IMG/VR virus record: IMGVR_UViG_3300042010_000106
Coordinates: 1 to 64,000 of that record
DNA: 64,000 nucleotides
Direction: 5' to 3' (one strand)
Made by a program: the position numbers and the translations under genes. The notes under the pieces were generated by a model. That model was not told the origin of the DNA and did no database searches. It was given only the letters and a program-made list of their open reading frames with translations. This document shows positions 7,839-29,511 of this stretch, piece after piece. The number at the start of each line of letters is the position of its first letter. The first letter of the stretch is position 1.

Positions 7839-8921
7839 ATGACTACTGCATTCAAAAGCGCTCGTATGGTACTGAAGAACGGCGCCCCACTCGAAGACCT
7901 GCGCTTCGGTAAGGGCCGCGAAATGGCTCTGTCGGCTTCGACCGGCGAGTTCAACGCCAGCGACAAGAAAGACCTTGCCCGCCAAATCGGCAACCTGATG
8001 GCCGCTTTCGCTTCCGGCGAAATCGTTCAACAAAAAGACGAAATCGCTGTTGCGAACCATCGCGAAATTCTCGCTGACGCACTGGCTTCCGAAGCAAACT
8101 GGAAAGCGTTGGGCGCGAACATCGCTCAACAAATTTACGAACAAGCAGACCGCGACGGTTTCCTGCGTAAAATTTCCGTAGGTAACACTCTGCGTCAAGG
8201 TGAAGTGCAGCGCGTTCCAATGCCTCCGCACGATACCTTCGCTGTAATCGCCACCGCTAACGCTGGTGTTGGTTATCAGCACATTCGCCAGAAAGTTTTC
8301 CAGCCTGAAGAATTCGAAATCATCGCCAACGTGCGCGTTTCGCAACTCGACATGCAACAAGTGAACGGCGATCTGCTGGAACACGCTTACAACGATGGTC
8401 TGCAAAGCATCATGGTTGCCGAAGACAAACTGTGGAAAAAAGCTGCCGATATGACCGTGGGTGTTGTTAACCCACTGGAATACATCGCCGGTGAACTGAC
8501 CACCAAAAACCTCGGCAAACTGCGTCAAGCCGTAGCCCAATGGAACCTGCCAGCTTCGACCGCGATTATCGCGAACGATTACTGGTCGGACATCATCGGT
8601 TCGAACGATTTCGCAACCTTCCTCGATCCAATCACCAAATACGATCTGGCCCTGAACGGCCAACTCGGTACGCTGGTTGGTCTGAACCTGATCACTGACG
8701 CATTCCGTCAGCCGAATCAGAAGGTTCTGAACAAAGGCGAAATCTACGTTGTTTCCGACGCACAAAACCACGCTGCATATTCGACCCGTGGCGGCATCAC
8801 CTCCACTCCAGTAGACGGCGCCTTCGAAGGCACCACTTCGAAAGGTTGGTTGCTGAGCGAAATGTTCTCGTTCATCCTGACCAACAACCGTTCGGTTGCT
8901 AAAGGTCAGCGTCTGATCTAA
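7839..8921 (+). CDS. major capsid protein (HK97-like fold)
   Basis: 360 aa; 'GQLGTLVGLNLITD' P-domain-like motif; position after scaffold; very strong codon bias. Confidence 0.8.
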   Translation: MTTAFKSARMVLKNGAPLEDLRFGKGREMALSASTGEFNASDKKDLARQIGNLMAAFASGEIVQQKDEIAVANHREILADALASEANWKALGANIAQQIYEQADRDGFLRKISVGNTLRQGEVQRVPMPPHDTFAVIATANAGVGYQHIRQKVFQPEEFEIIANVRVSQLDMQQVNGDLLEHAYNDGLQSIMVAEDKLWKKAADMTVGVVNPLEYIAGELTTKNLGKLRQAVAQWNLPASTAIIANDYWSDIIGSNDFATFLDPITKYDLALNGQLGTLVGLNLITDAFRQPNQKVLNKGEIYVVSDAQNHAAYSTRGGITSTPVDGAFEGTTSKGWLLSEMFSFILTNNRSVAKGQRLI

Positions 8922-11696: not shown

Positions 11697-13301
11697 ATGC
11701 CCCTTTACAACGGCAGTAATACTGCTCCGGGTATGTACGGCGGAGAGGAAGACAATTCTTTTTCTCCAACGCAACGTTACCCAAGCACGGGCGCAATGGT
11801 AGGCGAAGCAAATCGCGGTCAAGTCGGCATTCCTGTTCGCTTAACAAGCAAAGAAGAATGGCGCAGCCTTTTTGGCCGTCGTGACGCTACCCTTACCTAT
11901 GCCCACTTCTGTGCAGAACGTTTCCTCGAAATTGCACAAACAATGTGGTTCATTCGTGTTGATACCGAGGCGAATTACGGTTCGTGCAGTATCCGCACCG
12001 TGAACGGTTTCGCTACCGGGAAAGCTGCTACAAATGGCTACCTCGATCCAGTCACCGAACACAACCAATTGCCAGACGAAATTCTGCTGATCTACGGGGC
12101 TAACCCCGGTTCGTGGAACAACAATCTGCGCGTTCTGCTTTACCCGGACACGAACGATATCGAAAACGAATTGTTCATTTTGCAAGTGTTCGAAACCAAC
12201 ATGAATGCCCCGGTTGAAACACACCGTGTTGTTCTGCGCGACAAAGTAAACGGCGTTAACAAGCAATTGAACGTCGAATACGTTTTGGAAAATGAAAGCA
12301 CGCGCATCCGTGCGAAAATCAACGTAGACAATCCACAATGGATTGCGAACGAAGGTAAGCTGCGTTTGGTTAACGCCATCGTAACGCAAGACCTGAGCTA
12401 CGGTGATAACGGTCGCAAAGCAAACAACGGCGACATCATGAACGCGTGGGAAGAGTTTTCCAACGAAGACGATTTCGAAATCCGCATTCTGATCAACGCA
12501 GGTTACACCGACACGGGCGTTCAAAACCGCATGCTGCAATTGTGCGAAGAACGTCGCGACTGTTTCGCAATTCTCGACATTCCATCGGATATGCAAACCG
12601 TTGCACGTGCTGTCGATTACCGCCGTAACATCCTGAACGCCAACACCAGTTTCGGTGCGATTTATTGCTCTGACATTCTGGAAGTGACGGACGAAGGCCA
12701 AGAAATTTACGTTCCATGCTCCGGTGCAATCGCTGCTGTGTTCGCACAGTCCGACGCCGCTGAAGCTGAATGGTGGGCGCCTGCTGGTGTGACCCGTGGT
12801 GTGATCAAAAACATCAACGGTATTCGCCACAAGTATTCGCAGAACGAGCGTAACATTCTCGACCAGAACCAAATCAACTTCATTCACAAATTCAGCGGCT
12901 ACGGCTTCTGCGTTTGGGGTGCACAAACTCTGCAAGCGCAAAAGTCCGCACTGCAAGATATTCCGGTACGTCGCCTGATCAACACGATTGAAACGACTGC
13001 GAAATATGACGGGCTTGTGATTCTGTTCGATCCGAACGATGAATTCTTGTGGGGCCAGTTGAAAGGTTTGATCGAAGCGATTCTGCGTCCGATCATGAAC
13101 GCCCGTGGCCTGTATTTCTACGCTGTGAAATGTGACAAAGACACTAACCCGCCTGCACAAGTTGCTAACGGTGATATTGCTGCTGTCTACATCATTCAGC
13201 CGATGCGGTACGCGAAACGAATTCTGTTCACGACTACCGTAGCGGCCACCGGGCAACTGAGTACCGCTGTCGATTACGTGACTGCTGACACGAACATTTA
13301 A
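11697..13301 (+). CDS. tail sheath protein
   Basis: WWAPAG..RG, QINFI, VWGAQTL, IPVRRL, FDPND, VKCDKDTNPP: T4 gp18-type motifs. Confidence 0.95.
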   Translation: MPLYNGSNTAPGMYGGEEDNSFSPTQRYPSTGAMVGEANRGQVGIPVRLTSKEEWRSLFGRRDATLTYAHFCAERFLEIAQTMWFIRVDTEANYGSCSIRTVNGFATGKAATNGYLDPVTEHNQLPDEILLIYGANPGSWNNNLRVLLYPDTNDIENELFILQVFETNMNAPVETHRVVLRDKVNGVNKQLNVEYVLENESTRIRAKINVDNPQWIANEGKLRLVNAIVTQDLSYGDNGRKANNGDIMNAWEEFSNEDDFEIRILINAGYTDTGVQNRMLQLCEERRDCFAILDIPSDMQTVARAVDYRRNILNANTSFGAIYCSDILEVTDEGQEIYVPCSGAIAAVFAQSDAAEAEWWAPAGVTRGVIKNINGIRHKYSQNERNILDQNQINFIHKFSGYGFCVWGAQTLQAQKSALQDIPVRRLINTIETTAKYDGLVILFDPNDEFLWGQLKGLIEAILRPIMNARGLYFYAVKCDKDTNPPAQVANGDIAAVYIIQPMRYAKRILFTTTVAATGQLSTAVDYVTADTNI

Positions 13302-15176: not shown

Positions 15177-16139
15177 ATGACTACAAGCCAGAATGCCTAT
15201 TACTCGGACGCCCGGTATTTCGATATCGGCGATATGCCCAGCGGCGGTAAAACATACGACTACGACAGGTTTTATGTTCGTCAATTTGCGGCAGAAGAAT
15301 TACCGCTGCTGCACTACGGCATGAACACCCGAGTGCGCGCACATGAACACGTTATCCGTGCCGTTCAAATGGCTTGTAGTGCTGACCTTTCGCAATTGAC
15401 TGACGGTGATTTGTGCTACGTGATGGCATGGATTCGTCGGCAATCTTTTCCTGAAACGCCACTGCAAGCAAAGTACATTTGTACGAACATGCTTTATCAG
15501 GATGATGTCGGAAACATTTACCGCGACCTCTCACGGAAAGAAGCTGAAATTAAAGGCTACGTGTTGAAGGCGTGCGGTCGTGATAACGTCAACCTAATCA
15601 AAAGCACGGCGATTAAAATTCACACGCTGGAAGACGAAAATCTGCAAGTCATTGACCATCCTGAAATTGATTTCGCACGCGTAAGCACACTGGCGGACTT
15701 TCATGAATACGTCGATGACAATCCGCACATGCGGTACAAAGCAGACTTGGCCCGGTGGATTCGCAAAGGCAAAACACTCAAAGCAAAACTCATGTATTTG
15801 GATTCCCAAAAGGATTTCAAATTGTGGGAAGAAATCGAACGCATAAAGAATGCGCACTTCCACGGTATCACTGAAGAGATTCAGTTGCGTTGCTCTGACT
15901 GCAACCATGTCAAGATGCACGAATCGACGCCGTGTTTGCTGAAGTTCTTCGCCGACAATAGCGACAAAGACGTGTACAACATGACGTACAATTTGATGGC
16001 GCAATTCGGTGCGAGTCCTAACCTGAAAATGCCTGCCCAAATGCTGATGTATCACCACAGCACATTGGTTGATGACCGTCGCAAGTCTGAGCAAGCTGCA
16101 AAAGAACGGGCCGCGCAGCATCGCAAGGGGTTTAGATAA
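15177..16139 (+). CDS. baseplate hub assembly protein (gp26/gp51-like paralog)
   Basis: MPSGG..Y, LTDGDLCYVMAWIR, CSDC; paralog of preceding ORF. Confidence 0.65.
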   Translation: MTTSQNAYYSDARYFDIGDMPSGGKTYDYDRFYVRQFAAEELPLLHYGMNTRVRAHEHVIRAVQMACSADLSQLTDGDLCYVMAWIRRQSFPETPLQAKYICTNMLYQDDVGNIYRDLSRKEAEIKGYVLKACGRDNVNLIKSTAIKIHTLEDENLQVIDHPEIDFARVSTLADFHEYVDDNPHMRYKADLARWIRKGKTLKAKLMYLDSQKDFKLWEEIERIKNAHFHGITEEIQLRCSDCNHVKMHESTPCLLKFFADNSDKDVYNMTYNLMAQFGASPNLKMPAQMLMYHHSTLVDDRRKSEQAAKERAAQHRKGFR

Positions 16140-19100
16140 TGGCAAAGCTGTCAGAATTAAATGCAATTGCGGGAAAGCATGATCCGCGTTCGAAGCCCCA
16201 AAAGGGCAGCGCGCTTATGCAGCATTCTCGCGGTGCAAATGAACATCACGTGGAAATCAGCGAACGCCAAGGAAACGGAACACGCCGCCCTTCGCAATAC
16301 GCTCCACGAAATGTTACAGGCCGTGCCGAACGTATCGCGCATCCATCGGTGAACATTCGCGGGCCGGACAACAGCGCATTGATTGAGCATCAAACTGATG
16401 TCATGAAATCACAAGGCGTTGCGGTCAACAAACAATCGCAAGTTCTGGCACAACAAACGGGTCTGATGCACGATCAAATCCGCGCAACAAAAGACGTATC
16501 GCAAGTGGTGGAACGTCTTTACGAATACATGCAGAAAGAAGGGAATAAACTCAATCCCAAAGTTCAGCAAAGTGCAAAAGGGAATACGTACGAAGGCCAG
16601 TTCGAACGTGTTCAAGAAAAACAAATGGCTATGCAGGAACAGCGCCAACGTCGTCGTGAAATTTCCGATGATTTGCGCCGTCAACGTAGCGAACGCGCAC
16701 GCGGAATGGATCGTGACGAACGCGGTCGGTTTCAACGTGGCAAAAAAGGTTTGATTCCAAAGATTCAAGATTTCGGCGGTCGCTTAGGTGGTGCCGGTGG
16801 CGCTGGCGGTCGTTTGGGAGGTATGGGTGGTGGTGCCGGTGGTTTGCTCCGTATGGCTGGCCCTCTTCTTGCGCTCGCTACAGCTTTCTACGGCGGCAAA
16901 GCAATGGAAGCTGCCAGCGACAACTACCGTTATGATGTGAAAAATGCAGGAACAGTTGCACGCGGTTGGCAATCGACAAAAGACGTTGTAGGTGACGCAC
17001 TTGGCGGCATCGGCGGCGATCAAATGGCGATGATGGCACAGAATCCAAAATTCGCGGGTGATATTGCAGGCGCTACCAAGAAAGGAAAAGAAGGTGGCCT
17101 CGGTTCTGTATCTGCTTATTTTGAATCTGGTAATCGCGGCGTTGAAACCGTTTCTACAGGGAAAGGCGACAACGGCGGTGTAAGTTACGGCACGCACCAA
17201 CTCAGTTCTAAATCGGGCACCATGAATGCGTTCCTGCGTTCTGAAGAAGGCTCGAAATATTACAATGAATTCCGTGGTCTGAAAGCAGGCTCCAAAGAAT
17301 TCAACGAGAAATACCTCGACGTTGTGAAGAACGACAAAGAGGGTATGGAAGGCGCACAGAAAGCGTTCATTAAAAAGACGCATTTCGATCCGCTGTCGAG
17401 CTGGGTAAACAAACAATACGGTATCGACGTTAACGAACGTAGCCGCGCTGTACAGGAATTGATGTATTCGCTTTCTGTTCAACACGGTGCGTCTGGTGCG
17501 CAGGACATTATTTCGCAAGCGTTCGGCAACCGTGATGCTGCGTCAATGAGCGACAAGGAAATCATTGACCGCATTCAGAAATATCGTACATACAACGTCG
17601 GTTCTCTGTTTCGTTCCAGCAGTAAAGAAACACAAGTTGCAATGCAGGAACGCGGCTGGAAAGAAACCGCTGCATTGAACAACCTGCTGGAAACGGAAAA
17701 TAGCGGTAACGGTTCTGTTGCAGGATCGAATTACAAAGGCATGGGTTCGGCTATGGCCGGTACTGGTGAATTTGCGGCTGCTCAAAAGAGTTTCGGCGGT
17801 AAACCAAACCTAATGCTCGCTTCTGGAAACGGCGGTGGCGGTGGTGGTTCTTCAAACGGTACTGTAGGCGTTATGGCACCGGGCGGCGGTTCTGCTTCTG
17901 GTGCATCCGGTAACGCTGACGAAGCTGGCGCAAATGCTGGCGTGGAATATCAGGATAACGGAAACTTTTTCAACATTGGTGTGAAGAACGTTGTTCCTGC
18001 TGACTCCAGTGTAAACCTTGCTGGATTGAATCCGAAATTTCAGAAAGCTTTCTTCACCATGGTTGGTGATTGGGTAACGAATTTCGGTGGTGGTACAGTT
18101 ACTTCTGCTTCTGCATTCCGTACCCGCGCTGAGCAAGAAGCTTTGTGGGTAAAATACGGACGAAATACCAAACGTGTTGCACGTCCGGGTACATCGCGTC
18201 ACGAATCTGGTTTTGCAATCGACATCGACCGTAATTCTGCTGGCAAACTTGAGCAATCAGGAATGTTTAAGAAATACGGTTTCCATCGCCCACTTTCCAA
18301 CGAGCCTTGGCACGTTGAAATGGTCGGTGCTGGTAAAGGTGGTGGCGGTGTTTCCACTTCTGGTTCGGCTCCAAGTCCGCAAGTAATGCAAAAAGCTGCG
18401 GAACAGGAACTGAATAAAGTTGGCGAATCGCAAGTTGTTAGCGCGGAAGAAGGCACACGCCAAGCAGTCACGAAAGAGAATGCAAAAGCTGAAGCCGAAG
18501 TGCAAAGCATGCAGTCTGCAATTGCTGGCGGTGCTGATCCAACCACAACCGGTGAACCTCCTGCTGCTGGCGCTGGAAAAGAAGGCGAAGTTTCTACAAC
18601 TGCGCAGGGTGGCGGTGCCGAGAAAATCGACGCAGCAAATCGCACACCAGAACAACAAGCAATGTATGAACAGTATCTGAAAAGTTCTGGCGGTGATCCA
18701 CGGAAAGTTCCGCCTGATATTTTCACCAATCCGGCTGCATATGGATTGAGTGCAAAAGATGCTGAAGGGCAGAAGGTGATGAAACCCGGCGAGCCAATGC
18801 CACCAATGGTTACGGCTGGTGGTTTGCCTCCTGCGCTCAACGGAATGAAAACAACACCACGCCCAAATGATCCTGATATTTTCACGAACGGTGCTGCATA
18901 TGGATTGGACGGAAAGCCGGGACAAGTCGCGCTAGACGTGAATGGTCAACCGTACGAAGACCTCAATTATCGTGGCGGAAAAATCAACACGATGGCAACG
19001 CCGGGTGTGCAGACAGGACAAATTCAAAGCACTGCGGAATTGTTCAAGAATCCACAAGGCGGCGCGGCAGTTCAAAGCGGTAATCCTTTTGGCGCAAATC

Positions 19101-19834
19101 CTAACGGGCCTGTAATGGGGCCGAATGGAGTTCAAAAGGAACCGGGATTGCTTGATAGATTCGGAATTAAACCAACGATTTATCAAAGCGGTGCAGGTGT
19201 TGGTGGCGGTATTAGTGGTGGCGTTCTCGGCGGCATCAACATGAACAAAGGCGTTCGTGGAAAAGGTTCTGTTTCCTACACGCCGCCGTCTGTGTCTGGT
19301 GTTTTGGGTTCCCAAGGTTTGGGCATCCCCGGAATGAATGGTCAAATTGGCGGAATTATTGACGGTTTAACACGCGGTCAAAAACCCGGCAAAGACAGCA
19401 TGATTGATATGGCGGCATCGGCGGCAATTGGTGGTTTGTTTTCCATGGCGCAGGATCGTCCTAAACCAATGGAACCAACTGTTTCGCCAGTGCAATCTTT
19501 TACCAGTCCTGCGTCACCTTCGTATTATGCAAATGAACAACCAATCGTAGCGAAAGCAGCGACAATGGCACCGGCTTCTGTAATGCCTGTGCAAACAACG
19601 ACAGCACCGGTCGAAGCAACGCGTCAAGCATACGATCCAGTGCAATCGGTTAACGTTGTTAGTGCACCACCTCAAGAAAGCGCACCGGCTGTTGCTGGCG
19701 GGCCTGCTGCGGGTTCTGGTGCTGCTGGTGGCGGTGCAGGCGCGGGCGGTGGTTCTGATATGCCACAACTCGACGAAATTCCTGCAATGCTCGACGACTA
19801 CGGTTTACTGTTCATCAATTCAGGATATTGCTAA
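16139..19834 (+). CDS. tape measure/tail-associated lysin with lysozyme-like (VgrG3-C-like) and M15 peptidase domains
   Basis: coiled-coil and Gly-rich regions; FESG..GD.GGVSYG.HQL; FRT..EQ...ARPGTSRHESGFAIDI...EPWHVE. Confidence 0.8.
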   Translation: MAKLSELNAIAGKHDPRSKPQKGSALMQHSRGANEHHVEISERQGNGTRRPSQYAPRNVTGRAERIAHPSVNIRGPDNSALIEHQTDVMKSQGVAVNKQSQVLAQQTGLMHDQIRATKDVSQVVERLYEYMQKEGNKLNPKVQQSAKGNTYEGQFERVQEKQMAMQEQRQRRREISDDLRRQRSERARGMDRDERGRFQRGKKGLIPKIQDFGGRLGGAGGAGGRLGGMGGGAGGLLRMAGPLLALATAFYGGKAMEAASDNYRYDVKNAGTVARGWQSTKDVVGDALGGIGGDQMAMMAQNPKFAGDIAGATKKGKEGGLGSVSAYFESGNRGVETVSTGKGDNGGVSYGTHQLSSKSGTMNAFLRSEEGSKYYNEFRGLKAGSKEFNEKYLDVVKNDKEGMEGAQKAFIKKTHFDPLSSWVNKQYGIDVNERSRAVQELMYSLSVQHGASGAQDIISQAFGNRDAASMSDKEIIDRIQKYRTYNVGSLFRSSSKETQVAMQERGWKETAALNNLLETENSGNGSVAGSNYKGMGSAMAGTGEFAAAQKSFGGKPNLMLASGNGGGGGGSSNGTVGVMAPGGGSASGASGNADEAGANAGVEYQDNGNFFNIGVKNVVPADSSVNLAGLNPKFQKAFFTMVGDWVTNFGGGTVTSASAFRTRAEQEALWVKYGRNTKRVARPGTSRHESGFAIDIDRNSAGKLEQSGMFKKYGFHRPLSNEPWHVEMVGAGKGGGGVSTSGSAPSPQVMQKAAEQELNKVGESQVVSAEEGTRQAVTKENAKAEAEVQSMQSAIAGGADPTTTGEPPAAGAGKEGEVSTTAQGGGAEKIDAANRTPEQQAMYEQYLKSSGGDPRKVPPDIFTNPAAYGLSAKDAEGQKVMKPGEPMPPMVTAGGLPPALNGMKTTPRPNDPDIFTNGAAYGLDGKPGQVALDVNGQPYEDLNYRGGKINTMATPGVQTGQIQSTAELFKNPQGGAAVQSGNPFGANPNGPVMGPNGVQKEPGLLDRFGIKPTIYQSGAGVGGGISGGVLGGINMNKGVRGKGSVSYTPPSVSGVLGSQGLGIPGMNGQIGGIIDGLTRGQKPGKDSMIDMAASAAIGGLFSMAQDRPKPMEPTVSPVQSFTSPASPSYYANEQPIVAKAATMAPASVMPVQTTTAPVEATRQAYDPVQSVNVVSAPPQESAPAVAGGPAAGSGAAGGGAGAGGGSDMPQLDEIPAMLDDYGLLFINSGYC

Positions 19835-24836: not shown

Positions 24837-24886
24837 CATATGTGGGCCAAACTGTAAATGAACCATACATAAAGGGGGAATTACAT

Positions 24887-25333
24887 ATGACTGATGTGCT
24901 TGAGCTGTACCATAGAATTTCAATGGACGACACGTTCAAAGTGCAGACCACGCTGTTTGGTCACGACGTTGATATGAGCGTACGAAACATTCAAGAAATT
25001 CGGGCAATGTTAAACCCGTCGCCCATACTGCGCCATAATATTTACTACCCAAATCGCATTTCCTTTTGCGAGATTTCTTTTGACGTGACGGCTTTCGGTA
25101 TCGTGCACGGCATGCGTATGTCTATTGACCCATACGCTGTGTTCCAAAGTCTGGCCGAAGCTGCACGCGAACTCACGAAATGCCTTAACTACAACAACAC
25201 ACAAATGGCGATGGACGCAGCAGCAATCAATTTCTTGGGTGTTGAATTCTATCTGACCGATTACGAAATGACGATAGATGCAAGCAACCTACAAATGAAT
25301 GCACGGCCGACACTGCGCGCATTAGAAATATAA
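24887..25333 (+). CDS. hypothetical protein
   Basis: AAGGGGG SD after terminator. Confidence 0.7.
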   Translation: MTDVLELYHRISMDDTFKVQTTLFGHDVDMSVRNIQEIRAMLNPSPILRHNIYYPNRISFCEISFDVTAFGIVHGMRMSIDPYAVFQSLAEAARELTKCLNYNNTQMAMDAAAINFLGVEFYLTDYEMTIDASNLQMNARPTLRALEI

Positions 25334-25346
25334 GAGAAAAATAACC

Positions 25347-25646
25347 GTGAATATTCCGCGTGCGTGCATGTATGCAGCTTTCTTTGTTTTGGCAACAGCA
25401 ACCTTAATGGCAGTCGGTGCAACAGTTGGTGCGCTGCTGGCAGTCGTGGCAATAGTTGTTAGCGTTATTCGTAGCGCTTTCACCATGGGCCTATATGACG
25501 CCAGCGTGACCGGCGCTGCAATTCTGATTCGCATTATACCGATTACTATTTTCTTGGGAGCGCTTGCGTTCGGTGGTATTGAAGCCTGTCGAAGCATCTG
25601 GAAATCCCTGACAAAAACTCTTTCGCAGCAATTGGGAAAAGAATGA
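25347..25646 (+). CDS. membrane protein
   Basis: two or three hydrophobic segments. Confidence 0.65.
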   Translation: MNIPRACMYAAFFVLATATLMAVGATVGALLAVVAIVVSVIRSAFTMGLYDASVTGAAILIRIIPITIFLGALAFGGIEACRSIWKSLTKTLSQQLGKE

Positions 25647-25891
25647 AAAGCAAATTCTACATATTGATTCTTGCAGTGGTATTCGTTTTCGCTTTGTTAC
25701 TGGCAAGCGCCTCGCTGCTGTTAGGTTACATCGTGCACTTGAAAGCAATGTGGGAATGGGAAAGCGGTCTACATAAACACGCAATCGCGCAGTGGACGTT
25801 AGGCGTAATGGCCGTAGCAGGCATTTGCGGCTGCGCATACTGTCTTGTCCGCGACACTTTCAAAACCCTTGCCGTAGGAATTTTCCGTTGA
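25643..25891 (+). CDS. membrane protein
   Basis: two TM segments; ATGA-coupled. Confidence 0.65.
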   Translation: MKSKFYILILAVVFVFALLLASASLLLGYIVHLKAMWEWESGLHKHAIAQWTLGVMAVAGICGCAYCLVRDTFKTLAVGIFR

Positions 25892-26511
25892 ACAGATATA
25901 CCGCAAATAAAATCGTTCGTCTGCTGTTGGCTAAACATACCAAGAATCAAGAAAGCCTTTTGCAAGACATGTTCCCCGGCGCGCACATTCGTTGTCCCGT
26001 ACCGGTCACTTGGTTTGATACACTGGCCGATTGCGTGCGTTTTATTGAAGGTGGGTTTGACAAGCCGACGACTCACGAAGAACGTAAAGAATTCATGGTG
26101 CCTCACGACGAAAACACCACCGACGCCGAGGCAATGGATAACTACGCCAGCGCATCGCTGAAAGCTTTTGCAAAACGTAACGGACTTGACTACACAGCAT
26201 GTGATGGCGATTCCAGCGTACGCATTCCCGGTCGCCGTGTAATTGCTGCTGCAAACCGTTATGGTGATTTGATTTGTGTGGGCACGCGCCACGGTGGCCC
26301 TGCAATGTGGTCGCAGTTGGAAGCCGTGAAAGAAGACCGTTTACTTGAGGCGGATAAATTGGGTCGCGCCGAAGAAGGTTTCATTGACCAGTACGATGTT
26401 TTCATGACACGGGAAGAAGCATACGAAGTTGCGTTAGCTTCGGGTCAAATCAACGTCATTCGTTTGAAGCATTCAACGCCCGGTCGTCTGTATTCTGAGG
26501 ATATACACTAA
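25888..26511 (+). CDS. conserved phage hypothetical protein
   Basis: TTG start coupled to upstream stop; C-terminal AAA.R..G.RH...GFIDQ...F.TREEA...LYSED domain common in phages. Confidence 0.7.
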   Translation: MNRYTANKIVRLLLAKHTKNQESLLQDMFPGAHIRCPVPVTWFDTLADCVRFIEGGFDKPTTHEERKEFMVPHDENTTDAEAMDNYASASLKAFAKRNGLDYTACDGDSSVRIPGRRVIAAANRYGDLICVGTRHGGPAMWSQLEAVKEDRLLEADKLGRAEEGFIDQYDVFMTREEAYEVALASGQINVIRLKHSTPGRLYSEDIH

Positions 26512-26945
26512 TGAATTTCGGTGAAGGTCAAATGCTGTCGCTTGAAGAAATGAACAAGCTGAATTCCGCAGCGCAACGTCGCATAAACGAATTGAAAAAT
26601 ACACTGCATAGAATTCAACACGACAGAGATATGGAACCTCGCGACCGCGTGGGTTGCGGCCATGCTAAAAGCTTGAAAGAAGCACTGGATACGTTGCGTA
26701 ATCAGCGGAACACAATCGTTGAACTACAGGGTCACATTCACAACGAAGCTCTTGCAAAAGAAGCGTGCCGCAAAGCAGACAACGATCCGAAATTCGCAGA
26801 AGAGTTTCAGTCAATCGTTCGTGAACTGAATCTGCAAAATATTCTTGCACAGTACGAAGCTGAAGCAAGTAAGGTTGTGGTGGCCATCCGTAAATCGCGG
26901 ACGAAATGGTATGAACGTTTGTACACTTGGGTAATGAGCCACTGA
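26511..26945 (+). CDS. hypothetical coiled-coil protein
   Basis: GAGG SD, coupled. Confidence 0.7.
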   Translation: MNFGEGQMLSLEEMNKLNSAAQRRINELKNTLHRIQHDRDMEPRDRVGCGHAKSLKEALDTLRNQRNTIVELQGHIHNEALAKEACRKADNDPKFAEEFQSIVRELNLQNILAQYEAEASKVVVAIRKSRTKWYERLYTWVMSH

Positions 26946-26946
26946 T

Positions 26947-27276
26947 ATGAAAAAGATTACGTCATTGCATCAAGCAAATGAATATCTGAAGGACTTGGCG
27001 ATTTACCTTTGGCAGAAAGAAAACATTATTCATTGTGCAACGTCGGTAGGCCACGTTATTCGTTTGCGTTTTCCTGAAGTCGCGCCGTGCAAAAGTATGG
27101 CAGAAGCCGTTTCGCTTTTGCGTGAGTACGCACAACGTATGCGCGACTGTGATAAACGTTTCAAAACGTTGACGGAAGAACAGCAAGGCGCTGTTGAGCA
27201 TGTCTGGCGATTGGAACGGGAAAGTTACAAAGCTTTCAACGAAATTGTGCAAGGCTGGTATCCACCACACCAATAA
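26947..27276 (+). CDS. hypothetical protein
   Basis: tiling ORF. Confidence 0.7.
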   Translation: MKKITSLHQANEYLKDLAIYLWQKENIIHCATSVGHVIRLRFPEVAPCKSMAEAVSLLREYAQRMRDCDKRFKTLTEEQQGAVEHVWRLERESYKAFNEIVQGWYPPHQ

Positions 27277-27285
27277 GGAAAACAA

Positions 27286-27633
27286 ATGAGTAAGTTCGCG
27301 CCAGATGCACCTTACAATGGCACTATTCGCCGTTGGGTAAAAGAGGGTTTGCGTAAGCCTTGCGAACCAAATAAATGTATTGTTGGTTTGATCGGTACTC
27401 ATGAAATACCGATGGATGAATGGCAAGCAAATGTTGACGCGTGGCAACGCAGCATTGATAGCTTTAATGAAAGCCGCTTAGCAATTCCGCATCCCGGTTT
27501 TGCGTTCCCTATTCGATTCTGTACCAAATGCGGAAATCCCGTTATGGAATTCCACGGTGAAACACCAGAAGACATCGCTGCAACGGAAGAACGAATAGCA
27601 AATATATTCAATGCAATGACAACGAAGTCGTAA
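27286..27633 (+). CDS. hypothetical protein with FCxxCG Zn-ribbon half-motif
   Basis: AAGGA SD. Confidence 0.7.
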   Translation: MSKFAPDAPYNGTIRRWVKEGLRKPCEPNKCIVGLIGTHEIPMDEWQANVDAWQRSIDSFNESRLAIPHPGFAFPIRFCTKCGNPVMEFHGETPEDIAATEERIANIFNAMTTKS

Positions 27634-27689
27634 TTTAATACAAGGGAAAGTATTAACGGGTTCCCCAGCCCCTACACCAAGGAAACACC

Positions 27690-28610
27690 ATGGAAATTCT
27701 AAAATATACGGGCAAGCTGGCGGAAATCGTCGCGCTTGTTCGTGATGCAGGCGAGCCGCCTGATGTGCGTGCTGTTTTTGTTACACGCGAAGAAATGGAT
27801 ACCATCATTAACGACCATAGTTTCCGCACAACCGTGTCGAAATACTACGGCGATAGCTCCACGATGGTTTACAACTCCATTACCGCAGATACCGAAGGCA
27901 ATATCATTTCGCTGTATCTCAATCACATTCTGATTGCACTCGCGCCTGAAGATCCAACGGGGCCAATTGCTGAATTGACATATCCACCACTGACCACCAA
28001 TCCAAGTGCAGCGACTACGTTTGCAAATGGCGGTGATTTGCTGGTCGGTACAGGCAACCCGGCAACCGGTATGATGGTTGGTACAAACGCCAACATTGAA
28101 CTGGCTTTGGCTGTGCGTAAAGCGCAAGACCTGACGAATTACAACAGTGGCACAGGCCGCTTTGTGATTCCAGTCGAAGAAAACGAAAACTGGAATTTCG
28201 TTGTTAGCGTTGGTTCGATGAATGCGGATGTTCCAAACATCACGGACATGTACAACGTCAAACTTTTCCTCGACCTGAATTCGTACGAAGGCCAGACCAC
28301 CAATCTCGTTTTCGAACTGAAATTTGTCGAAGGTTATATCAACGGCAACGCTGTTAAAAACTACGTCTGGTACAAAGGCGTGGAACCTGTAGTAGTCGAT
28401 GGCACCACGAACGAAGACCTGACCGTCACGCAGATGATTCAGAAATATTCGTTCCAGTTTATCAGCAAATACATTCCGAGTTATGTGCAGCGTAACGAAG
28501 CTGGCGCACCACTTGGGAATTTCACGCTGCGTCTGGAAGCCACACCGAAATACGGTGATAGCGAGCCGGTATCGGTTGAAGTGTTGGCAACGATTACAAA
28601 AAAGAAGTAA
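27690..28610 (+). CDS. putative virion protein (short form)
   Basis: AAGGA SD, preceded by TAATTT motif; Thr/Asn/Gly-rich beta composition. Confidence 0.65.
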   Translation: MEILKYTGKLAEIVALVRDAGEPPDVRAVFVTREEMDTIINDHSFRTTVSKYYGDSSTMVYNSITADTEGNIISLYLNHILIALAPEDPTGPIAELTYPPLTTNPSAATTFANGGDLLVGTGNPATGMMVGTNANIELALAVRKAQDLTNYNSGTGRFVIPVEENENWNFVVSVGSMNADVPNITDMYNVKLFLDLNSYEGQTTNLVFELKFVEGYINGNAVKNYVWYKGVEPVVVDGTTNEDLTVTQMIQKYSFQFISKYIPSYVQRNEAGAPLGNFTLRLEATPKYGDSEPVSVEVLATITKKK

Positions 28611-29422
28611 CGCCCGTTCCTCGAAAAACCTTTTTGGTCGGTACGTCTGACGGTTTAATTGTACAGTCGTCTCAAGGGAGTTTTGATCAAATGTCTCCGG
28701 CTACGGCCATAAGAGATATCGTCGCAGGTGCAGGCCGTTGGTTGGCTGTAGGCGGCGAAGGTTCGGGTTCTGTTTTTTCTTCCACAGACAAAGCCACTTG
28801 GGTAGAAATGCCATTTGGTTTTGGTGAGTGCAAAGCTGCAATTTTCTCTGCTGGTAAATTCTACGTAGCGGTTGATGGCGAAGGTATCTACGCACTCGAC
28901 GCGGATGTTTGGACACTGGTTCAAGCGAGCGCACAAGTTTTCACAAACGGTGTGGACGCAAACGGTGTTCCAATATTTGCAACTACGGACGGCGACCTTT
29001 GGGTTGGCCCAACGTGGACAAGTAAGAAAGTATCGAGCGGCAAATTGAAAGTTGCGTACAACGCTAAACTTTTTGTCGCAAGCCTTGTCGGTGAAACACT
29101 GGAAACATTGGTTGGAACCACCGCACAAAATCTTGTATCAGAAGGCACCAGTACCCTCGACGGACTAGATATTTTCTCGTTCTTCGTGGATGCAAACGGT
29201 GTTGTAGTCGGTACGTGTAAAATGAATGTGGATGAACCGCTGATTATGGTTCGTCGCAACAACAAATGGACATTCGTTTTCTCCGACATGCCTGTACCAC
29301 TGACTCACGTTGTGAACAAAGCCGTAGCAGGTGGCCCAACGATTTACACCACCAGCAATTACTTTGATTACACCGAGTATTACTCTGTCGATAAAGACAT
29401 AACCGCATTGCTGTACGCATAA
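28598..29422 (+). CDS. beta-propeller-like ORF, probably a -1 frameshift extension of 27690 (alternative independent start ATG 28691)
   Basis: A_AAA_AAG at 28598-28604; -1 frame open from there to 29422; repeated blade-like units. Confidence 0.6.
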   Translation, partial: KKEVTPVPRKTFLVGTSDGLIVQSSQGSFDQMSPATAIRDIVAGAGRWLAVGGEGSGSVFSSTDKATWVEMPFGFGECKAAIFSAGKFYVAVDGEGIYALDADVWTLVQASAQVFTNGVDANGVPIFATTDGDLWVGPTWTSKKVSSGKLKVAYNAKLFVASLVGETLETLVGTTAQNLVSEGTSTLDGLDIFSFFVDANGVVVGTCKMNVDEPLIMVRRNNKWTFVFSDMPVPLTHVVNKAVAGGPTIYTTSNYFDYTEYYSVDKDITALLYA

Positions 29423-29423
29423 C

Positions 29424-29460
29424 AAAGGCCCTCGTTAGCTAACGCTTTCGGGGGCTTTTT
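29424..29460 (+). terminator. intrinsic terminator
   Basis: AAAGGCCCTCG...CGGGGGCTTTTT. Confidence 0.75.
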
Positions 29461-29511
29461 CGTTGGTGCTGAAAACTGTAAAGAAGAGCCATACACATAC
29501 AGGGCAAGTTG

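What the first reader, a model, noticed from the sequence alone, without database searches (positions are those of the whole stretch)
27690..29422. Probable programmed -1 frameshift (A_AAA_AAG) adding a beta-propeller to a putative virion protein
Seen: ORF 27690 ends ACA AAA AAG AAG TAA, with the heptamer A AAA AAG at 28598-28604. The -1 frame is closed by TGA at 28577, then open through the slip site (..K K E V T P V P R K T F L V G T S D G..) to 29422, giving a 577-aa fusion versus the 306-aa short form. The segment FLVGTSDGLIVQSS resembles the later blades (WLAVGGEG..VFSS, FYVAVDGEGIY, IFATTDGDLWV) but lies upstream of the first ATG (28691). Established: A_AAA_AAG is the dnaX/IS-type slippery site, and phages use frameshifts to append accessory domains to structural proteins, usually Ig-like domains. 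A propeller extension outside the main tail module is unusual. Caveat: AAGGGAG precedes ATG 28691, so independent initiation is also possible.
Basis: partly seen in the sequence, partly recalled or inferred. Interest (0 to 1): 0.7.

Follow-up and report, generated by a model that had tools for sequence, protein, structure and literature searches.

The report
Conserved frameshift adds propeller to jumbo-phage protein
A giant soil phage, like at least 14 relatives including the published Pseudomonas phages Lu11 and HRDY3, very probably uses a programmed backward ribosome slip on A-AAA-AAG to make, beside a 306-residue Ig-like protein, a 577-residue version that carries a seven-bladed beta-propeller; current annotations call these two separate genes.

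Summary
ORF1 (27690-28610) ends ACA AAA AAG AAG TAA, with A_AAA_AAG at 28598-28604. The -1 frame is open from 28580 to 29422.

- All 15 distinct relatives that have a propeller ORF in the -1 frame keep AAAAAAG in the same phase, 0-1 codon before the ORF1 stop. ORF1 identity to the window is 41-79%.
- Outside the window's close clade, the extension has no ATG, GTG or TTG for 17-131 codons.
- One relative (P0010, 582 aa) encodes both parts as a single in-frame protein without a heptamer. Its junction is collinear, without a gap, with the predicted shift product.
- Four scattered relatives that lack the propeller also lack the heptamer.

AlphaFold2 (pLDDT 90) folds the extension as a complete 7-bladed propeller. 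Three strands of one blade lie upstream of ATG 28691. Independent assemblies show no indel in the A-run.

A downstream hairpin is clear in the Lu11 clade but weak in the window. Additional initiation at ATG 28691 is not excluded. A virion role rests only on a distant PA5oct homologue found in virions by mass spectrometry.

Verdict: a real, unannotated -1 frameshift, and a new member of a known kind.

The parts
27679..27683 (+). Shine-Dalgarno-like AAGGA, 6 nt before the ORF1 start
   Evidence: Sequence; SD scan of the window's genes.
27690..28610 (+). ORF1, the 0-frame short form (306 aa, P0001). Residues 1-90 form a small alpha/beta domain of lower confidence; residues about 95-304 form an Ig-like beta-sandwich.
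   Evidence: AF2 model m6a96de6164d7: pLDDT 85.3. VIA best match Z 7.2 to an Ig-like domain. BFVD matches to jumbo-phage 'surface/structural' proteins. 24 homologues.
28598..28604 (+). Slippery heptamer A_AAA_AAG in X_XXY_YYZ phase of ORF1, one codon before the 0-frame TAA
   Evidence: Invariant in 15 distinct related genomes. It is the only in-phase copy in a long ORF of the window. No indel in independent assemblies.
28604..29422 (+). -1 frame extension (272 codons plus TAA). A Pro-rich linker EVTPVPRKT is followed by a complete 7-bladed beta-propeller. Joined to ORF1 codons 1-305, it gives the 577-aa long form.
   Evidence: AF2 model meabc7b6d9ac5: pLDDT 90, pTM 0.88. Foldseek and VIA: 7-bladed propellers, Z 24.6, model residues 8-272. 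Collinear with the natural fusion P0010.
28605..28634 (+). First 10 codons after the slip, with suppressed synonymous variation in the window's clade. This points to a constraint at RNA level.
   Evidence: Third positions variable in 1 of 10 codons, against 185 of 306 elsewhere; Fisher p = 0.002.
28610..28646 (+). Weak, imperfect hairpin starting 6 nt after the heptamer. It sits where the clear stem-loop of the Lu11 clade sits, and is a candidate stimulator only.
   Evidence: -5.8 kcal/mol, z +0.8, no better than shuffles. Close relatives: -8 to -12 kcal/mol. Lu11 clade: -15 to -20 kcal/mol, with 17 consensus pairs.
28674..28693 (+). AAGGGAG (28674-28680), a 10-nt spacer, then ATG 28691. This is a possible internal start for a 243-aa propeller fragment and is the gene callers' start.
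   Evidence: Kept only in the window's close clade (L012-L016); absent in L028, the Lu11 clade, L025, L027 and the fusion L017. In the consensus fold, AAGGG pairs with CCUUU 28629-28633 (weak).
29424..29463 (+). Terminator-like hairpin (11-bp stem, 14-nt loop, U-run) that closes the ORF1-propeller unit
   Evidence: Sequence. In the propeller-less relatives the same element follows the ORF1 stop directly.
29474..29482 (+). AACTGTAAA, a promoter-like motif of the next transcription unit
   Evidence: 10 copies, all on the + strand, against 0.68 expected. Matches the element annotated as 'putative middle/late promoter' in Lu11.

Best explanation
ORF1 and the downstream propeller ORF form one expression unit that is decoded in two ways.

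Most ribosomes read ORF1 to its TAA. They release a 306-aa protein made of an N-terminal alpha/beta domain and an Ig-like beta-sandwich.

A fraction of ribosomes slip one base backwards. This happens when the P- and A-site tRNAs (both tRNA-Lys) sit on AAA AAG of A_AAA_AAG (28598-28604). These ribosomes continue in the -1 frame through a Pro-rich linker and a complete seven-bladed beta-propeller, giving a 577-aa protein with the same N-terminus.

Shown here:
- the anatomy of the site;
- the conservation of the site;
- the collinearity with a natural fusion;
- the co-occurrence of heptamer and propeller;
- the predicted fold.

Inferred:
- that the slip is translational;
- its efficiency;
- that the nearby 0-frame stop and a downstream RNA element help the slip (the element is strong in the Lu11 clade and weak here);
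- that the product is a virion-surface protein in which a minority of subunits display the propeller as an accessory binding module, probably for adhesion or glycans.
For: 1. The heptamer is in phase and the -1 frame is open across it.

2. AAAAAAG is invariant and in phase in 15 distinct genomes: the window, HRDY3, Lu11, L003, L004, L005, L008, L009, L012, L015, L016 and L025-L028. In each, a -1 ORF of 224-273 codons crosses it. The 0-frame TAA follows 0-1 codon later. The preceding codon is ACA, TCA, GCA or GTA.

3. Outside the window's close clade, the first ATG, GTG or TTG of the extension lies 17-131 codons after the slip. Yet the peptide (K/T)P(V/A)PR..(F/L)(V/L)VGG.. is conserved from the first codon.

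4. P0010 (L017) is a natural in-frame fusion. Residues 1-305 align with ORF1 (41% identity). Residues 306-582 align with the extension from its residue 1 (31%). The junction reads ITYK|EPTPTPKKTFIIG against ITKK|EVTPVPRKTFLVG, with no gap and no heptamer (ACC TAC AAA GAA).

5. Four relatives without the KK ending have no propeller in any frame. They are scattered on the ORF1 tree, which requires at least 4 independent changes.

6. Between the slip and ATG 28691, variable sites in the -1 frame number 5, 3 and 10 at codon positions 1, 2 and 3.

7. The AF2 model places strands 10-14, 17-21 and 27-29, all upstream of Met30, in a complete 7-bladed ring.

8. Synonymous variation is suppressed just after the heptamer: p = 0.002 in the window clade and 6e-11 in the HRDY3-like clade. 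The Lu11 clade has a conserved hairpin 7 nt downstream. Its only changes are G-U to A-U, U-A to U-G, or lie in loops.

9. Independent assemblies show no indel.

10. No terminator or promoter lies between the two ORFs; the terminator follows the propeller.
Against: - There is no direct evidence for the trans-frame protein: no proteome, ribosome profiling or RNA data. No run on record as RNA holds the stretch; one possible RNA run (a wastewater metatranscriptome, guessed RNA) holds 4% of the sampled words and was not examined.
- In the window itself the downstream hairpin is weak and no better than shuffled sequence.
- No conserved upstream Shine-Dalgarno-like stimulator exists.
- The window's clade keeps an ATG with a usable SD-like GGAG at a 10-nt spacing, so part or all of the propeller could in principle be made separately.
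- Transcriptional slippage on the A6 run would give the same protein and is not excluded.
- The virion location rests on a distant homologue only. Pfam and PHROGs give no family for either part.
Confidence: 0.85

Rival explanations
1. Frameshifting and internal initiation both operate in the window's clade. Besides the 306-aa and 577-aa forms, ribosomes also start at ATG 28691 and make a free 243-aa propeller fragment. Alternatively, this clade is moving from frameshift-dependent to independent expression.
For: ATG at codon 29 of the extension and AAGGGA(G/C) are kept in the window, L012, L015 and L016. The 10-nt spacer from GGAG is within the 4-11 nt range of the window's genes. Gene callers choose this start.
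Against: The Met is absent in the sister lineage L028 and in all other clades. The 243-aa product would lack three strands of one blade of a closed 7-bladed ring. The heptamer and the upstream peptide are still conserved in this clade, with a third-position bias. The consensus fold pairs the SD-like AAGGG with CCUUU 28629-28633, which is weak evidence.
Confidence: 0.25
2. The fusion is made by transcriptional slippage. The RNA polymerase adds one A in the A6 run, and ordinary translation of the edited mRNA gives the same 577-aa protein.
For: An extra A yields exactly the same junction (T K K E V T P). The A-run is conserved, including the wobble A of the preceding codon. The slippage properties of the polymerase that transcribes these genes are unknown.
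Against: From established knowledge, efficient bacterial transcriptional slippage needs runs of about 8 or more A/T. Here the run is always exactly 6, and position 7 is always G (AAA AAG, never AAA AAA). That is the optimum for ribosomal slippage with a single tRNA-Lys(UUU), not for polymerase slippage. A conserved hairpin 7 nt downstream in the Lu11 clade fits a ribosomal stimulator.
Confidence: 0.07
3. There are two ordinary, independent genes. The heptamer is fortuitous, and the propeller ORF starts at ATG 28691, or at TTG or GTG codons in relatives.
For: This is how every public record and gene caller annotates the locus. AAAAAAG alone is not rarer than chance.
Against: This reading cannot explain the invariant in-phase heptamer in 15 genomes. 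It cannot explain the conserved, foldable peptide upstream of any start codon, nor the lack of a start for up to 131 codons. It also fails to account for the gapless natural fusion and for the loss of the heptamer whenever the propeller is absent.
Confidence: 0.03
4. A sequencing or assembly error in the homopolymer has split what is really a single 577-aa gene.
For: Homopolymer runs are error-prone on some platforms, and one relative really is a single ORF.
Against: The same A6G appears in 15 independent genomes and assemblies. Contigs of two further runs of a variant strain show no indel. The true fusion has no A-run at all.
Confidence: 0.01

Closest known systems
E. coli dnaX (tau/gamma) and IS3-family (IS911, IS150) -1 frameshift sites
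   Same: The same heptamer, A_AAA_AAG, in the same phase. From established knowledge it is the most shift-prone -1 motif in bacteria that have a single tRNA-Lys(UUU). A stem-loop lies 6-7 nt downstream (clear in the Lu11 clade).
   Different: There is no conserved upstream Shine-Dalgarno-like stimulator. In dnaX the shifted frame ends at once and makes the shorter product, whereas here the shifted frame adds 272 residues. The window's own hairpin is weak. There is no sequence homology to either system.
Phage structural proteins extended at the C-terminus by programmed frameshifting. From my own knowledge: T7 capsid gp10A/10B, Lactobacillus phage A2 major head protein, SPP1 gp17.1*, the TP901-1/Tuc2009 tail-tube extension, and the Ig-like domains added by frameshift described by Fraser et al. 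2006. The A2 case is cited in PMC10885494.
   Same: The two products share an N-terminus. The 0-frame stop lies just after the slip site. The extension is an accessory module that some relatives lack and one relative carries constitutively.
   Different: The passenger is a complete 7-bladed beta-propeller of 263 residues rather than an Ig-like, FN3 or small lectin domain. The carrier is not a recognised capsid or tail-tube protein, and its virion location is unproven. The locus lies about 8 kb beyond the last large gene of the window's head-tail block (the 1231-aa ORF ending at 19834; tail sheath gene at 11697-13301).
Tail assembly chaperone G/GT-type frameshift of tailed phages
   Same: A conserved -1 frameshift in a phage that yields a short and a long product.
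   Different: The position is wrong: it is not between the tail tube and tape-measure genes, and the window's sheath gene is at 11697-13301. The sizes, folds and families are unrelated.
PA5oct EST35_0383, Yersinia phage fHe-Yen9 g099c/g098c and Sphingomonas phage PAU gp9 (jumbo-phage 'structural' or 'surface' proteins)
   Same: They share the Ig-like beta-sandwich of ORF1 residues about 105-304 (27-30% identity, E about 1e-7). The PA5oct protein was found in virions by ESI-MS/MS.
   Different: The ORF1 query matched those records only over their Ig-like part, and the propeller query matched none of them. The ends of those genes were not inspected for a slippery heptamer. The N-terminal domains differ.

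Membership tests
-1 programmed ribosomal frameshift site (X_XXY_YYZ type) | Slippery heptamer X_XXY_YYZ in the phase of the upstream ORF | tested here: met
   A_AAA_AAG lies at 28598-28604, with codons ACA AAA AAG.
-1 programmed ribosomal frameshift site (X_XXY_YYZ type) | A long -1 ORF that overlaps the site and depends on the shift because it has no start of its own | tested here: met
   The -1 frame is open from 28580 to 29422. In 11 of the 15 genomes the first ATG, GTG or TTG lies 17-131 codons after the slip. The window's close clade has ATG at codon 29, so dependence there is shown only for the first 29 codons, which are conserved and fold.
-1 programmed ribosomal frameshift site (X_XXY_YYZ type) | Heptamer conserved among homologues, including at synonymous positions | tested here: met
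   The heptamer is invariant in 15 distinct genomes. The preceding codon is ACA, TCA, GCA or GTA, and Lys-Lys is always AAA AAG. It is absent only where the propeller is absent or fused in frame.
-1 programmed ribosomal frameshift site (X_XXY_YYZ type) | Stimulatory RNA structure 5-9 nt downstream | tested here: inconclusive
   The Lu11 clade has a 17-pair consensus hairpin from 7 nt downstream, at -15 to -20 kcal/mol and z -1.6 to -1.9. The window gives -5.8 kcal/mol and z +0.8. Synonymous-site suppression after the heptamer is significant in both clades.
-1 programmed ribosomal frameshift site (X_XXY_YYZ type) | Upstream Shine-Dalgarno-like stimulator, as in dnaX and IS911. This is an auxiliary feature and is not obligatory. 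| tested here: not met
   No conserved GGAG- or AGGA-like element lies in the 30 nt upstream. The GAG/GAA codon there varies.
-1 programmed ribosomal frameshift site (X_XXY_YYZ type) | Trans-frame protein demonstrated | not testable with these tools
   No proteome is available and no run on record as RNA holds the stretch; one possible RNA run holds 4% of the sampled words and was not examined. The nearest substitute is the natural in-frame fusion P0010.
Frameshift-extended phage structural protein (T7 gp10A/B type) | The carrier is a virion protein | tested here: inconclusive
   The only support is a distant homologue (about 30% identity over 200 aa) found in PA5oct virions by ESI-MS/MS. Lu11 and HRDY3 annotate the gene as hypothetical.
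Frameshift-extended phage structural protein (T7 gp10A/B type) | The extension is an accessory, dispensable module | tested here: met
   Four scattered lineages have ORF1 without the propeller.
Seven-bladed beta-propeller fold | Closed ring of seven four-stranded blades | tested here: met
   The AF2 model has pLDDT 90 and 27 strands. VIA gives Z 24.6 to the 7-bladed designer protein 7bid, with model residues 8-272 aligned to chain residues 1-284. It also matches 7-bladed lactonases, BtuG and mLST8. This is a prediction, not a solved structure.
Named propeller repeat families in Pfam (Reg_prop, BNR and others) | Score above the family's gathering threshold | tested here: not met
   The best hit is Reg_prop at 13.8 bits against a cut-off of 20.4. 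Distant profile hits fall in DUF6242 and the HVO_0234-like propellers.
Tail assembly chaperone G/GT frameshift | Location between the tail tube and tape-measure genes, with chaperone-sized products | tested here: not met
   The locus lies about 8 kb downstream of the last large gene of the window's head-tail block (ends 19834), and the folds are unrelated.

The most novel reading that the evidence does not exclude
The frameshift acts as a stoichiometry dial on a modular host-adhesion device of jumbo phages. A multi-copy Ig-like virion protein displays a glycan- or surface-binding seven-bladed propeller on only a set fraction of its subunits. Lineages switch between three states: no propeller, sub-stoichiometric propeller (by frameshift) and propeller on every subunit (by in-frame fusion). 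The sharply conserved island of 30-90 nt after the heptamer would then do two jobs: stimulate the shift and serve as the recombination joint for swapping propeller cassettes. Two observations fit this: the variant strain's SNPs stop at 28584, and L026 carries a divergent passenger behind the same heptamer.
Probability: 0.25. Interest if true: 0.7.

Novelty: new member of a known kind. Interest (0 to 1): 0.58.

Why it matters
- It corrects the annotation of a conserved gene pair in a whole group of jumbo phages. This includes Pseudomonas phage Lu11, in GenBank since 2012, and HRDY3. Their downstream genes are currently given truncated GTG or TTG starts that cut off part of a folded domain.
- It adds a well-documented case of recoding outside the tail-chaperone and capsid genes, with an unusually large, complete-domain passenger.
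- It comes with natural controls that make it directly testable in cultivable phages: an in-frame fusion, four independent losses, and a clade with a possible internal start.
- If the protein is on the virion surface, the short-to-long ratio would set how many propellers each particle displays. That bears on adsorption and host range in soil and rhizosphere Pseudomonas phages.

Tried and rejected
- PHROGs found no family for ORF1 or the extension. Pfam gave only sub-threshold hits (SBBP 16.6 bits, Reg_prop 13.8 bits).
- Megablast of the region against GenBank phages found nothing.
- Foldseek of the ORF1 model against the PDB gave only generic Ig-like or arrestin-like matches with TM below 0.3. 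The VIA wide search topped out at Z 7.2, which is background level. The ESM Atlas gave only unnamed or generic Ig-like clusters.
- I tried to build an alignment for a full-length model of the natural fusion (A8). MAFFT misplaced the N-termini of the extension rows, so I did not use it. ORF1 and the extension were modelled separately.
- I did not submit the window's 577-aa fusion for folding. A -1 shifted product is not a letter-for-letter translation, and I did not try to get around that rule.
- I looked by eye for a pseudoknot between the hairpin loop and downstream sequence in the Lu11 clade. The candidate loop bases (GGUU) are not conserved and do not covary, so I dropped it.
- I looked for an upstream SD-like stimulator and found none conserved.
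- I searched for RNA-seq that could separate ribosomal from transcriptional slippage. No run on record as RNA holds the stretch; one possible RNA run holds 4% of the sampled words and was not examined.
- Literature searches for a jumbo-phage or propeller frameshift found no description of this case. The Lu11 genome paper is not in the searchable library.
- I did not use complex prediction, because no binding claim is made.
Full report
**1. The observation**

- ORF1 runs from ATG 27690 to TAA 28608-28610 (306 aa, P0001) and ends ACG ATT ACA AAA AAG AAG TAA.
- The heptamer A_AAA_AAG therefore lies at 28598-28604 in X_XXY_YYZ phase.
- In the -1 frame the last upstream stop is TGA 28577-28579. The frame is then open to TAA 29420-29422.
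- A slip on the heptamer continues GAA GUA ACG CCC... and reads E V T P V P R K T F L V G T S D G. The product is 305 + 272 = 577 aa.
- The first ATG of that frame is at 28691. AAGGGAG lies at 28674-28680.

The heptamer by itself is not improbable. AAAAAAG occurs 14 times in the window against 28.5 +/- 4.7 expected, so it is in fact depleted. However, of the eight copies on the coding strand, only the one at 28598 sits in slippery phase inside a long ORF.

Contigs from two further metagenome runs carry a variant strain with 20 SNPs. They span the A-run without any inserted or deleted letter, so the frame break is not an assembly artefact.

**2. What the genome is**

The window comes from an uncultivated jumbo phage of about 312 kb, found in a rhizosphere metagenome. 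It carries a major head protein gene (7839-8921) and a tail sheath gene (11697-13301), and all its genes are on the + strand.

The nearest cultivated relatives are Pseudomonas phages Lu11 and HRDY3. ORF1 is 42-43% identical to theirs and the propeller 31-36%. Both records annotate two separate hypothetical genes. Both give the downstream gene a truncated start: TTG in Lu11_0041 and GTG in XDJ15262.

**3. Comparative evidence for the frameshift**

I collected the locus from IMG/VR, Logan, ENA and JGI assemblies.

*The heptamer is conserved.* In 15 distinct genomes that carry a propeller ORF, AAAAAAG is invariant and in the same phase. These genomes are the window, HRDY3, Lu11, L003, L004, L005, L008, L009, L012, L015, L016 and L025-L028. 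In every one:
- the 0-frame TAA follows 0-1 codon later;
- a -1 ORF of 224-273 codons is open across the site;
- the codon before the Lys-Lys pair is ACA, TCA, GCA or GTA, so the amino acid changes but the wobble base stays A;
- Lys-Lys is always AAA AAG.

*The extension has no start of its own.* Outside the window's close clade, the first ATG, GTG or TTG of the extension lies 17-131 codons after the slip. The peptide is nevertheless conserved from its first codon, for example VVKPVPRRSLVVGGSG against EVTPVPRKTFLVGTS.

*A natural fusion exists.* A profile search of 1.84 billion proteins found P0010 (582 aa, on a 115-kb contig, L017). Its residues 1-305 align with ORF1 (41% identity). Its residues 306-582 align with the extension starting at residue 1 (31%). 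The junction reads ITYK|EPTPTPKKTFIIG against ITKK|EVTPVPRKTFLVG, without a gap. The DNA there is ACC TAC AAA GAA, with no slippery run. This fixes the shift site to within a codon.

*Where the propeller is missing, so is the heptamer.* Four ORF1 homologues do not end in KK: P0163, P0171, P0172 and P0180. None has a propeller in any frame. In three of them (L018-L020) the ORF1 stop is followed directly by the same terminator hairpin that follows the propeller in the window; L021 carries a different hairpin with a U-run there. On the ORF1 tree these four are scattered, and well-supported branches force at least four independent changes.

The heptamer is therefore kept exactly where there is a -1 ORF to reach, and nowhere else.

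**4. Evidence from coding and structure**

In the window's clade, the 29 codons between the slip and ATG 28691 vary at 5, 3 and 10 sites at codon positions 1, 2 and 3 of the -1 frame. That pattern is what coding sequence under selection shows.

AlphaFold2, run on a 10-sequence alignment, gives the extension mean pLDDT 90 and pTM 0.88, with 27 beta-strands. Structure comparison identifies a complete seven-bladed propeller:
- Foldseek's top match is a 7-bladed designer protein;
- VIA-align gives Z 24.6, with model residues 8-272 covering the whole chain;
- other matches include 7-bladed lactonases, BtuG lipoproteins and mLST8.

Strands 10-14, 17-21 and 27-29 lie upstream of Met30, the residue encoded by ATG 28691. 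A protein started at that ATG would therefore lack three strands of one blade.

The ORF1 model (pLDDT 85) has two parts: a small, less confident N-terminal alpha/beta domain, and a large Ig-like beta-sandwich at residues about 95-304. Its nearest structural relatives are jumbo-phage proteins annotated as surface or structural proteins. One of them, PA5oct EST35_0383, was detected in virions by ESI-MS/MS.

**5. RNA signals**

Synonymous variation collapses immediately after the heptamer.
- Window clade: third positions vary in 1 of the first 10 codons, against 185 of 306 elsewhere (p = 0.002).
- HRDY3-like clade: 3 of 28 against 105 of 137 (p = 6e-11). Nucleotide identity is 1.00, 0.90 and 0.95 in the three 30-nt blocks after the site, against about 0.70 upstream.

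In the Lu11 clade this region folds into a conserved hairpin of 17 consensus pairs that starts 7 nt after the heptamer. Its energy is -15 to -20 kcal/mol. The only substitutions are G-U to A-U, U-A to U-G, or lie in loops.

In the window, the hairpin at the same place (28610-28646) is weak: -5.8 kcal/mol, no better than shuffled sequence. A stimulatory structure is therefore not established for this genome. The adjacent 0-frame TAA and the intrinsic slipperiness of A_AAA_AAG may be enough; that is established knowledge for bacteria with a single tRNA-Lys(UUU) and was not tested here. No upstream SD-like element is conserved.

**6. Most likely mechanism, and rivals**

The best explanation, at confidence about 0.85, is a -1 programmed ribosomal frameshift. 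It yields a majority short form (306 aa) and a minority long form (577 aa) that carries the propeller. Efficiency and function are inferred, not shown.

By analogy with other frameshift-extended phage structural proteins, I infer a multi-copy virion-surface protein in which some subunits display an accessory binding module. The propeller's dispensability in four lineages and its constitutive fusion in one fit this picture.

The rivals are:
- additional internal initiation at ATG 28691 in the window's close clade, which is plausible because the SD spacing of 10 nt is within the window's range of 4-11 nt;
- transcriptional slippage on A6, which gives the same product but is disfavoured by the fixed run length and the invariant G;
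- two independent genes;
- a sequencing error.

The last two are contradicted by the data above.

**7. Comparison with known systems, and novelty**

The slip site is of the dnaX/IS3 type. The logic, a C-terminal extension of a phage structural protein, is that of T7 gp10A/10B, phage A2 head protein and SPP1 gp17.1*. It is not the tail-chaperone G/GT frameshift, because the position, size and folds are all wrong.

Three things are new:
- the gene family;
- the passenger, a complete seven-bladed propeller rather than an Ig-like or other small domain;
- the finding that this frameshift is conserved but unannotated across Lu11-like jumbo phages.

Literature searches found no description of it. I therefore class it as a new member of a known kind and score interest at about 0.58.

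Noticed in passing
window 20667, 22205, 24850, 29474, 31410, 36592, 42835, 43129, 53144, 55389 (+ strand): AACTGTAAA occurs 10 times, always on the coding strand, against 0.68 expected. It matches the element annotated in Lu11 as 'putative middle/late promoter'. The copy at 29474 sits just after the terminator of the frameshift unit. The nearest upstream copy is at 24850, so ORF1 and the propeller probably end a middle/late operon spanning 24850-29463.
   Followed up: partly
window 27857-28584 versus 28585-29422: A variant strain seen in two other metagenome runs (X2, X3) differs at 20 positions, all inside ORF1, with a cluster at 28550-28584. It shows no difference from the heptamer to the end of the propeller. 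This looks like a recombination boundary at the slip site, consistent with cassette exchange of the propeller.
   Followed up: no
L026:2400-3080 (ENA ERZ26880911 contig, ORF1 homologue P0174): The same in-phase AAAAAAG is followed by a divergent, shorter -1 extension (224 codons, GLITAPDIVYSDATG...). It barely resembles the other propellers, which suggests that different passenger modules sit behind one conserved slip site.
   Followed up: no
L023:2501-2782 (Pseudomonas phage PaBG, PaBG_00061): In PaBG, at the syntenic position downstream of dCTP deaminase, only the N-terminal domain of ORF1 (about 90 residues) is present, as a free-standing 93-aa gene (31% identity). The locus is therefore built from at least three separable modules.
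   Followed up: partly
L001:4194-4730 (HRDY3 XDJ15262) and L002:4038-4727 (Lu11_0041): In both published phage genomes the downstream gene is annotated from an internal GTG or TTG. This cuts off about 90 and 40 codons of conserved, folded sequence. Both records need a joined (frameshifted) CDS.
   Followed up: yes
window 16139-19834: A 1231-aa ORF downstream of the sheath gene has an endolysin-like segment at residues 655-728 (phrog_13118, E 2e-10). It may be a tape-measure or tail-lysin protein.
   Followed up: no
window, whole: AAAAAAG is present at half the number expected from dinucleotide-preserving shuffles (14 against 28.5). No tRNA genes lie in the 64 kb. The depletion is consistent with selection against accidental slippery sites.
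   Followed up: partly
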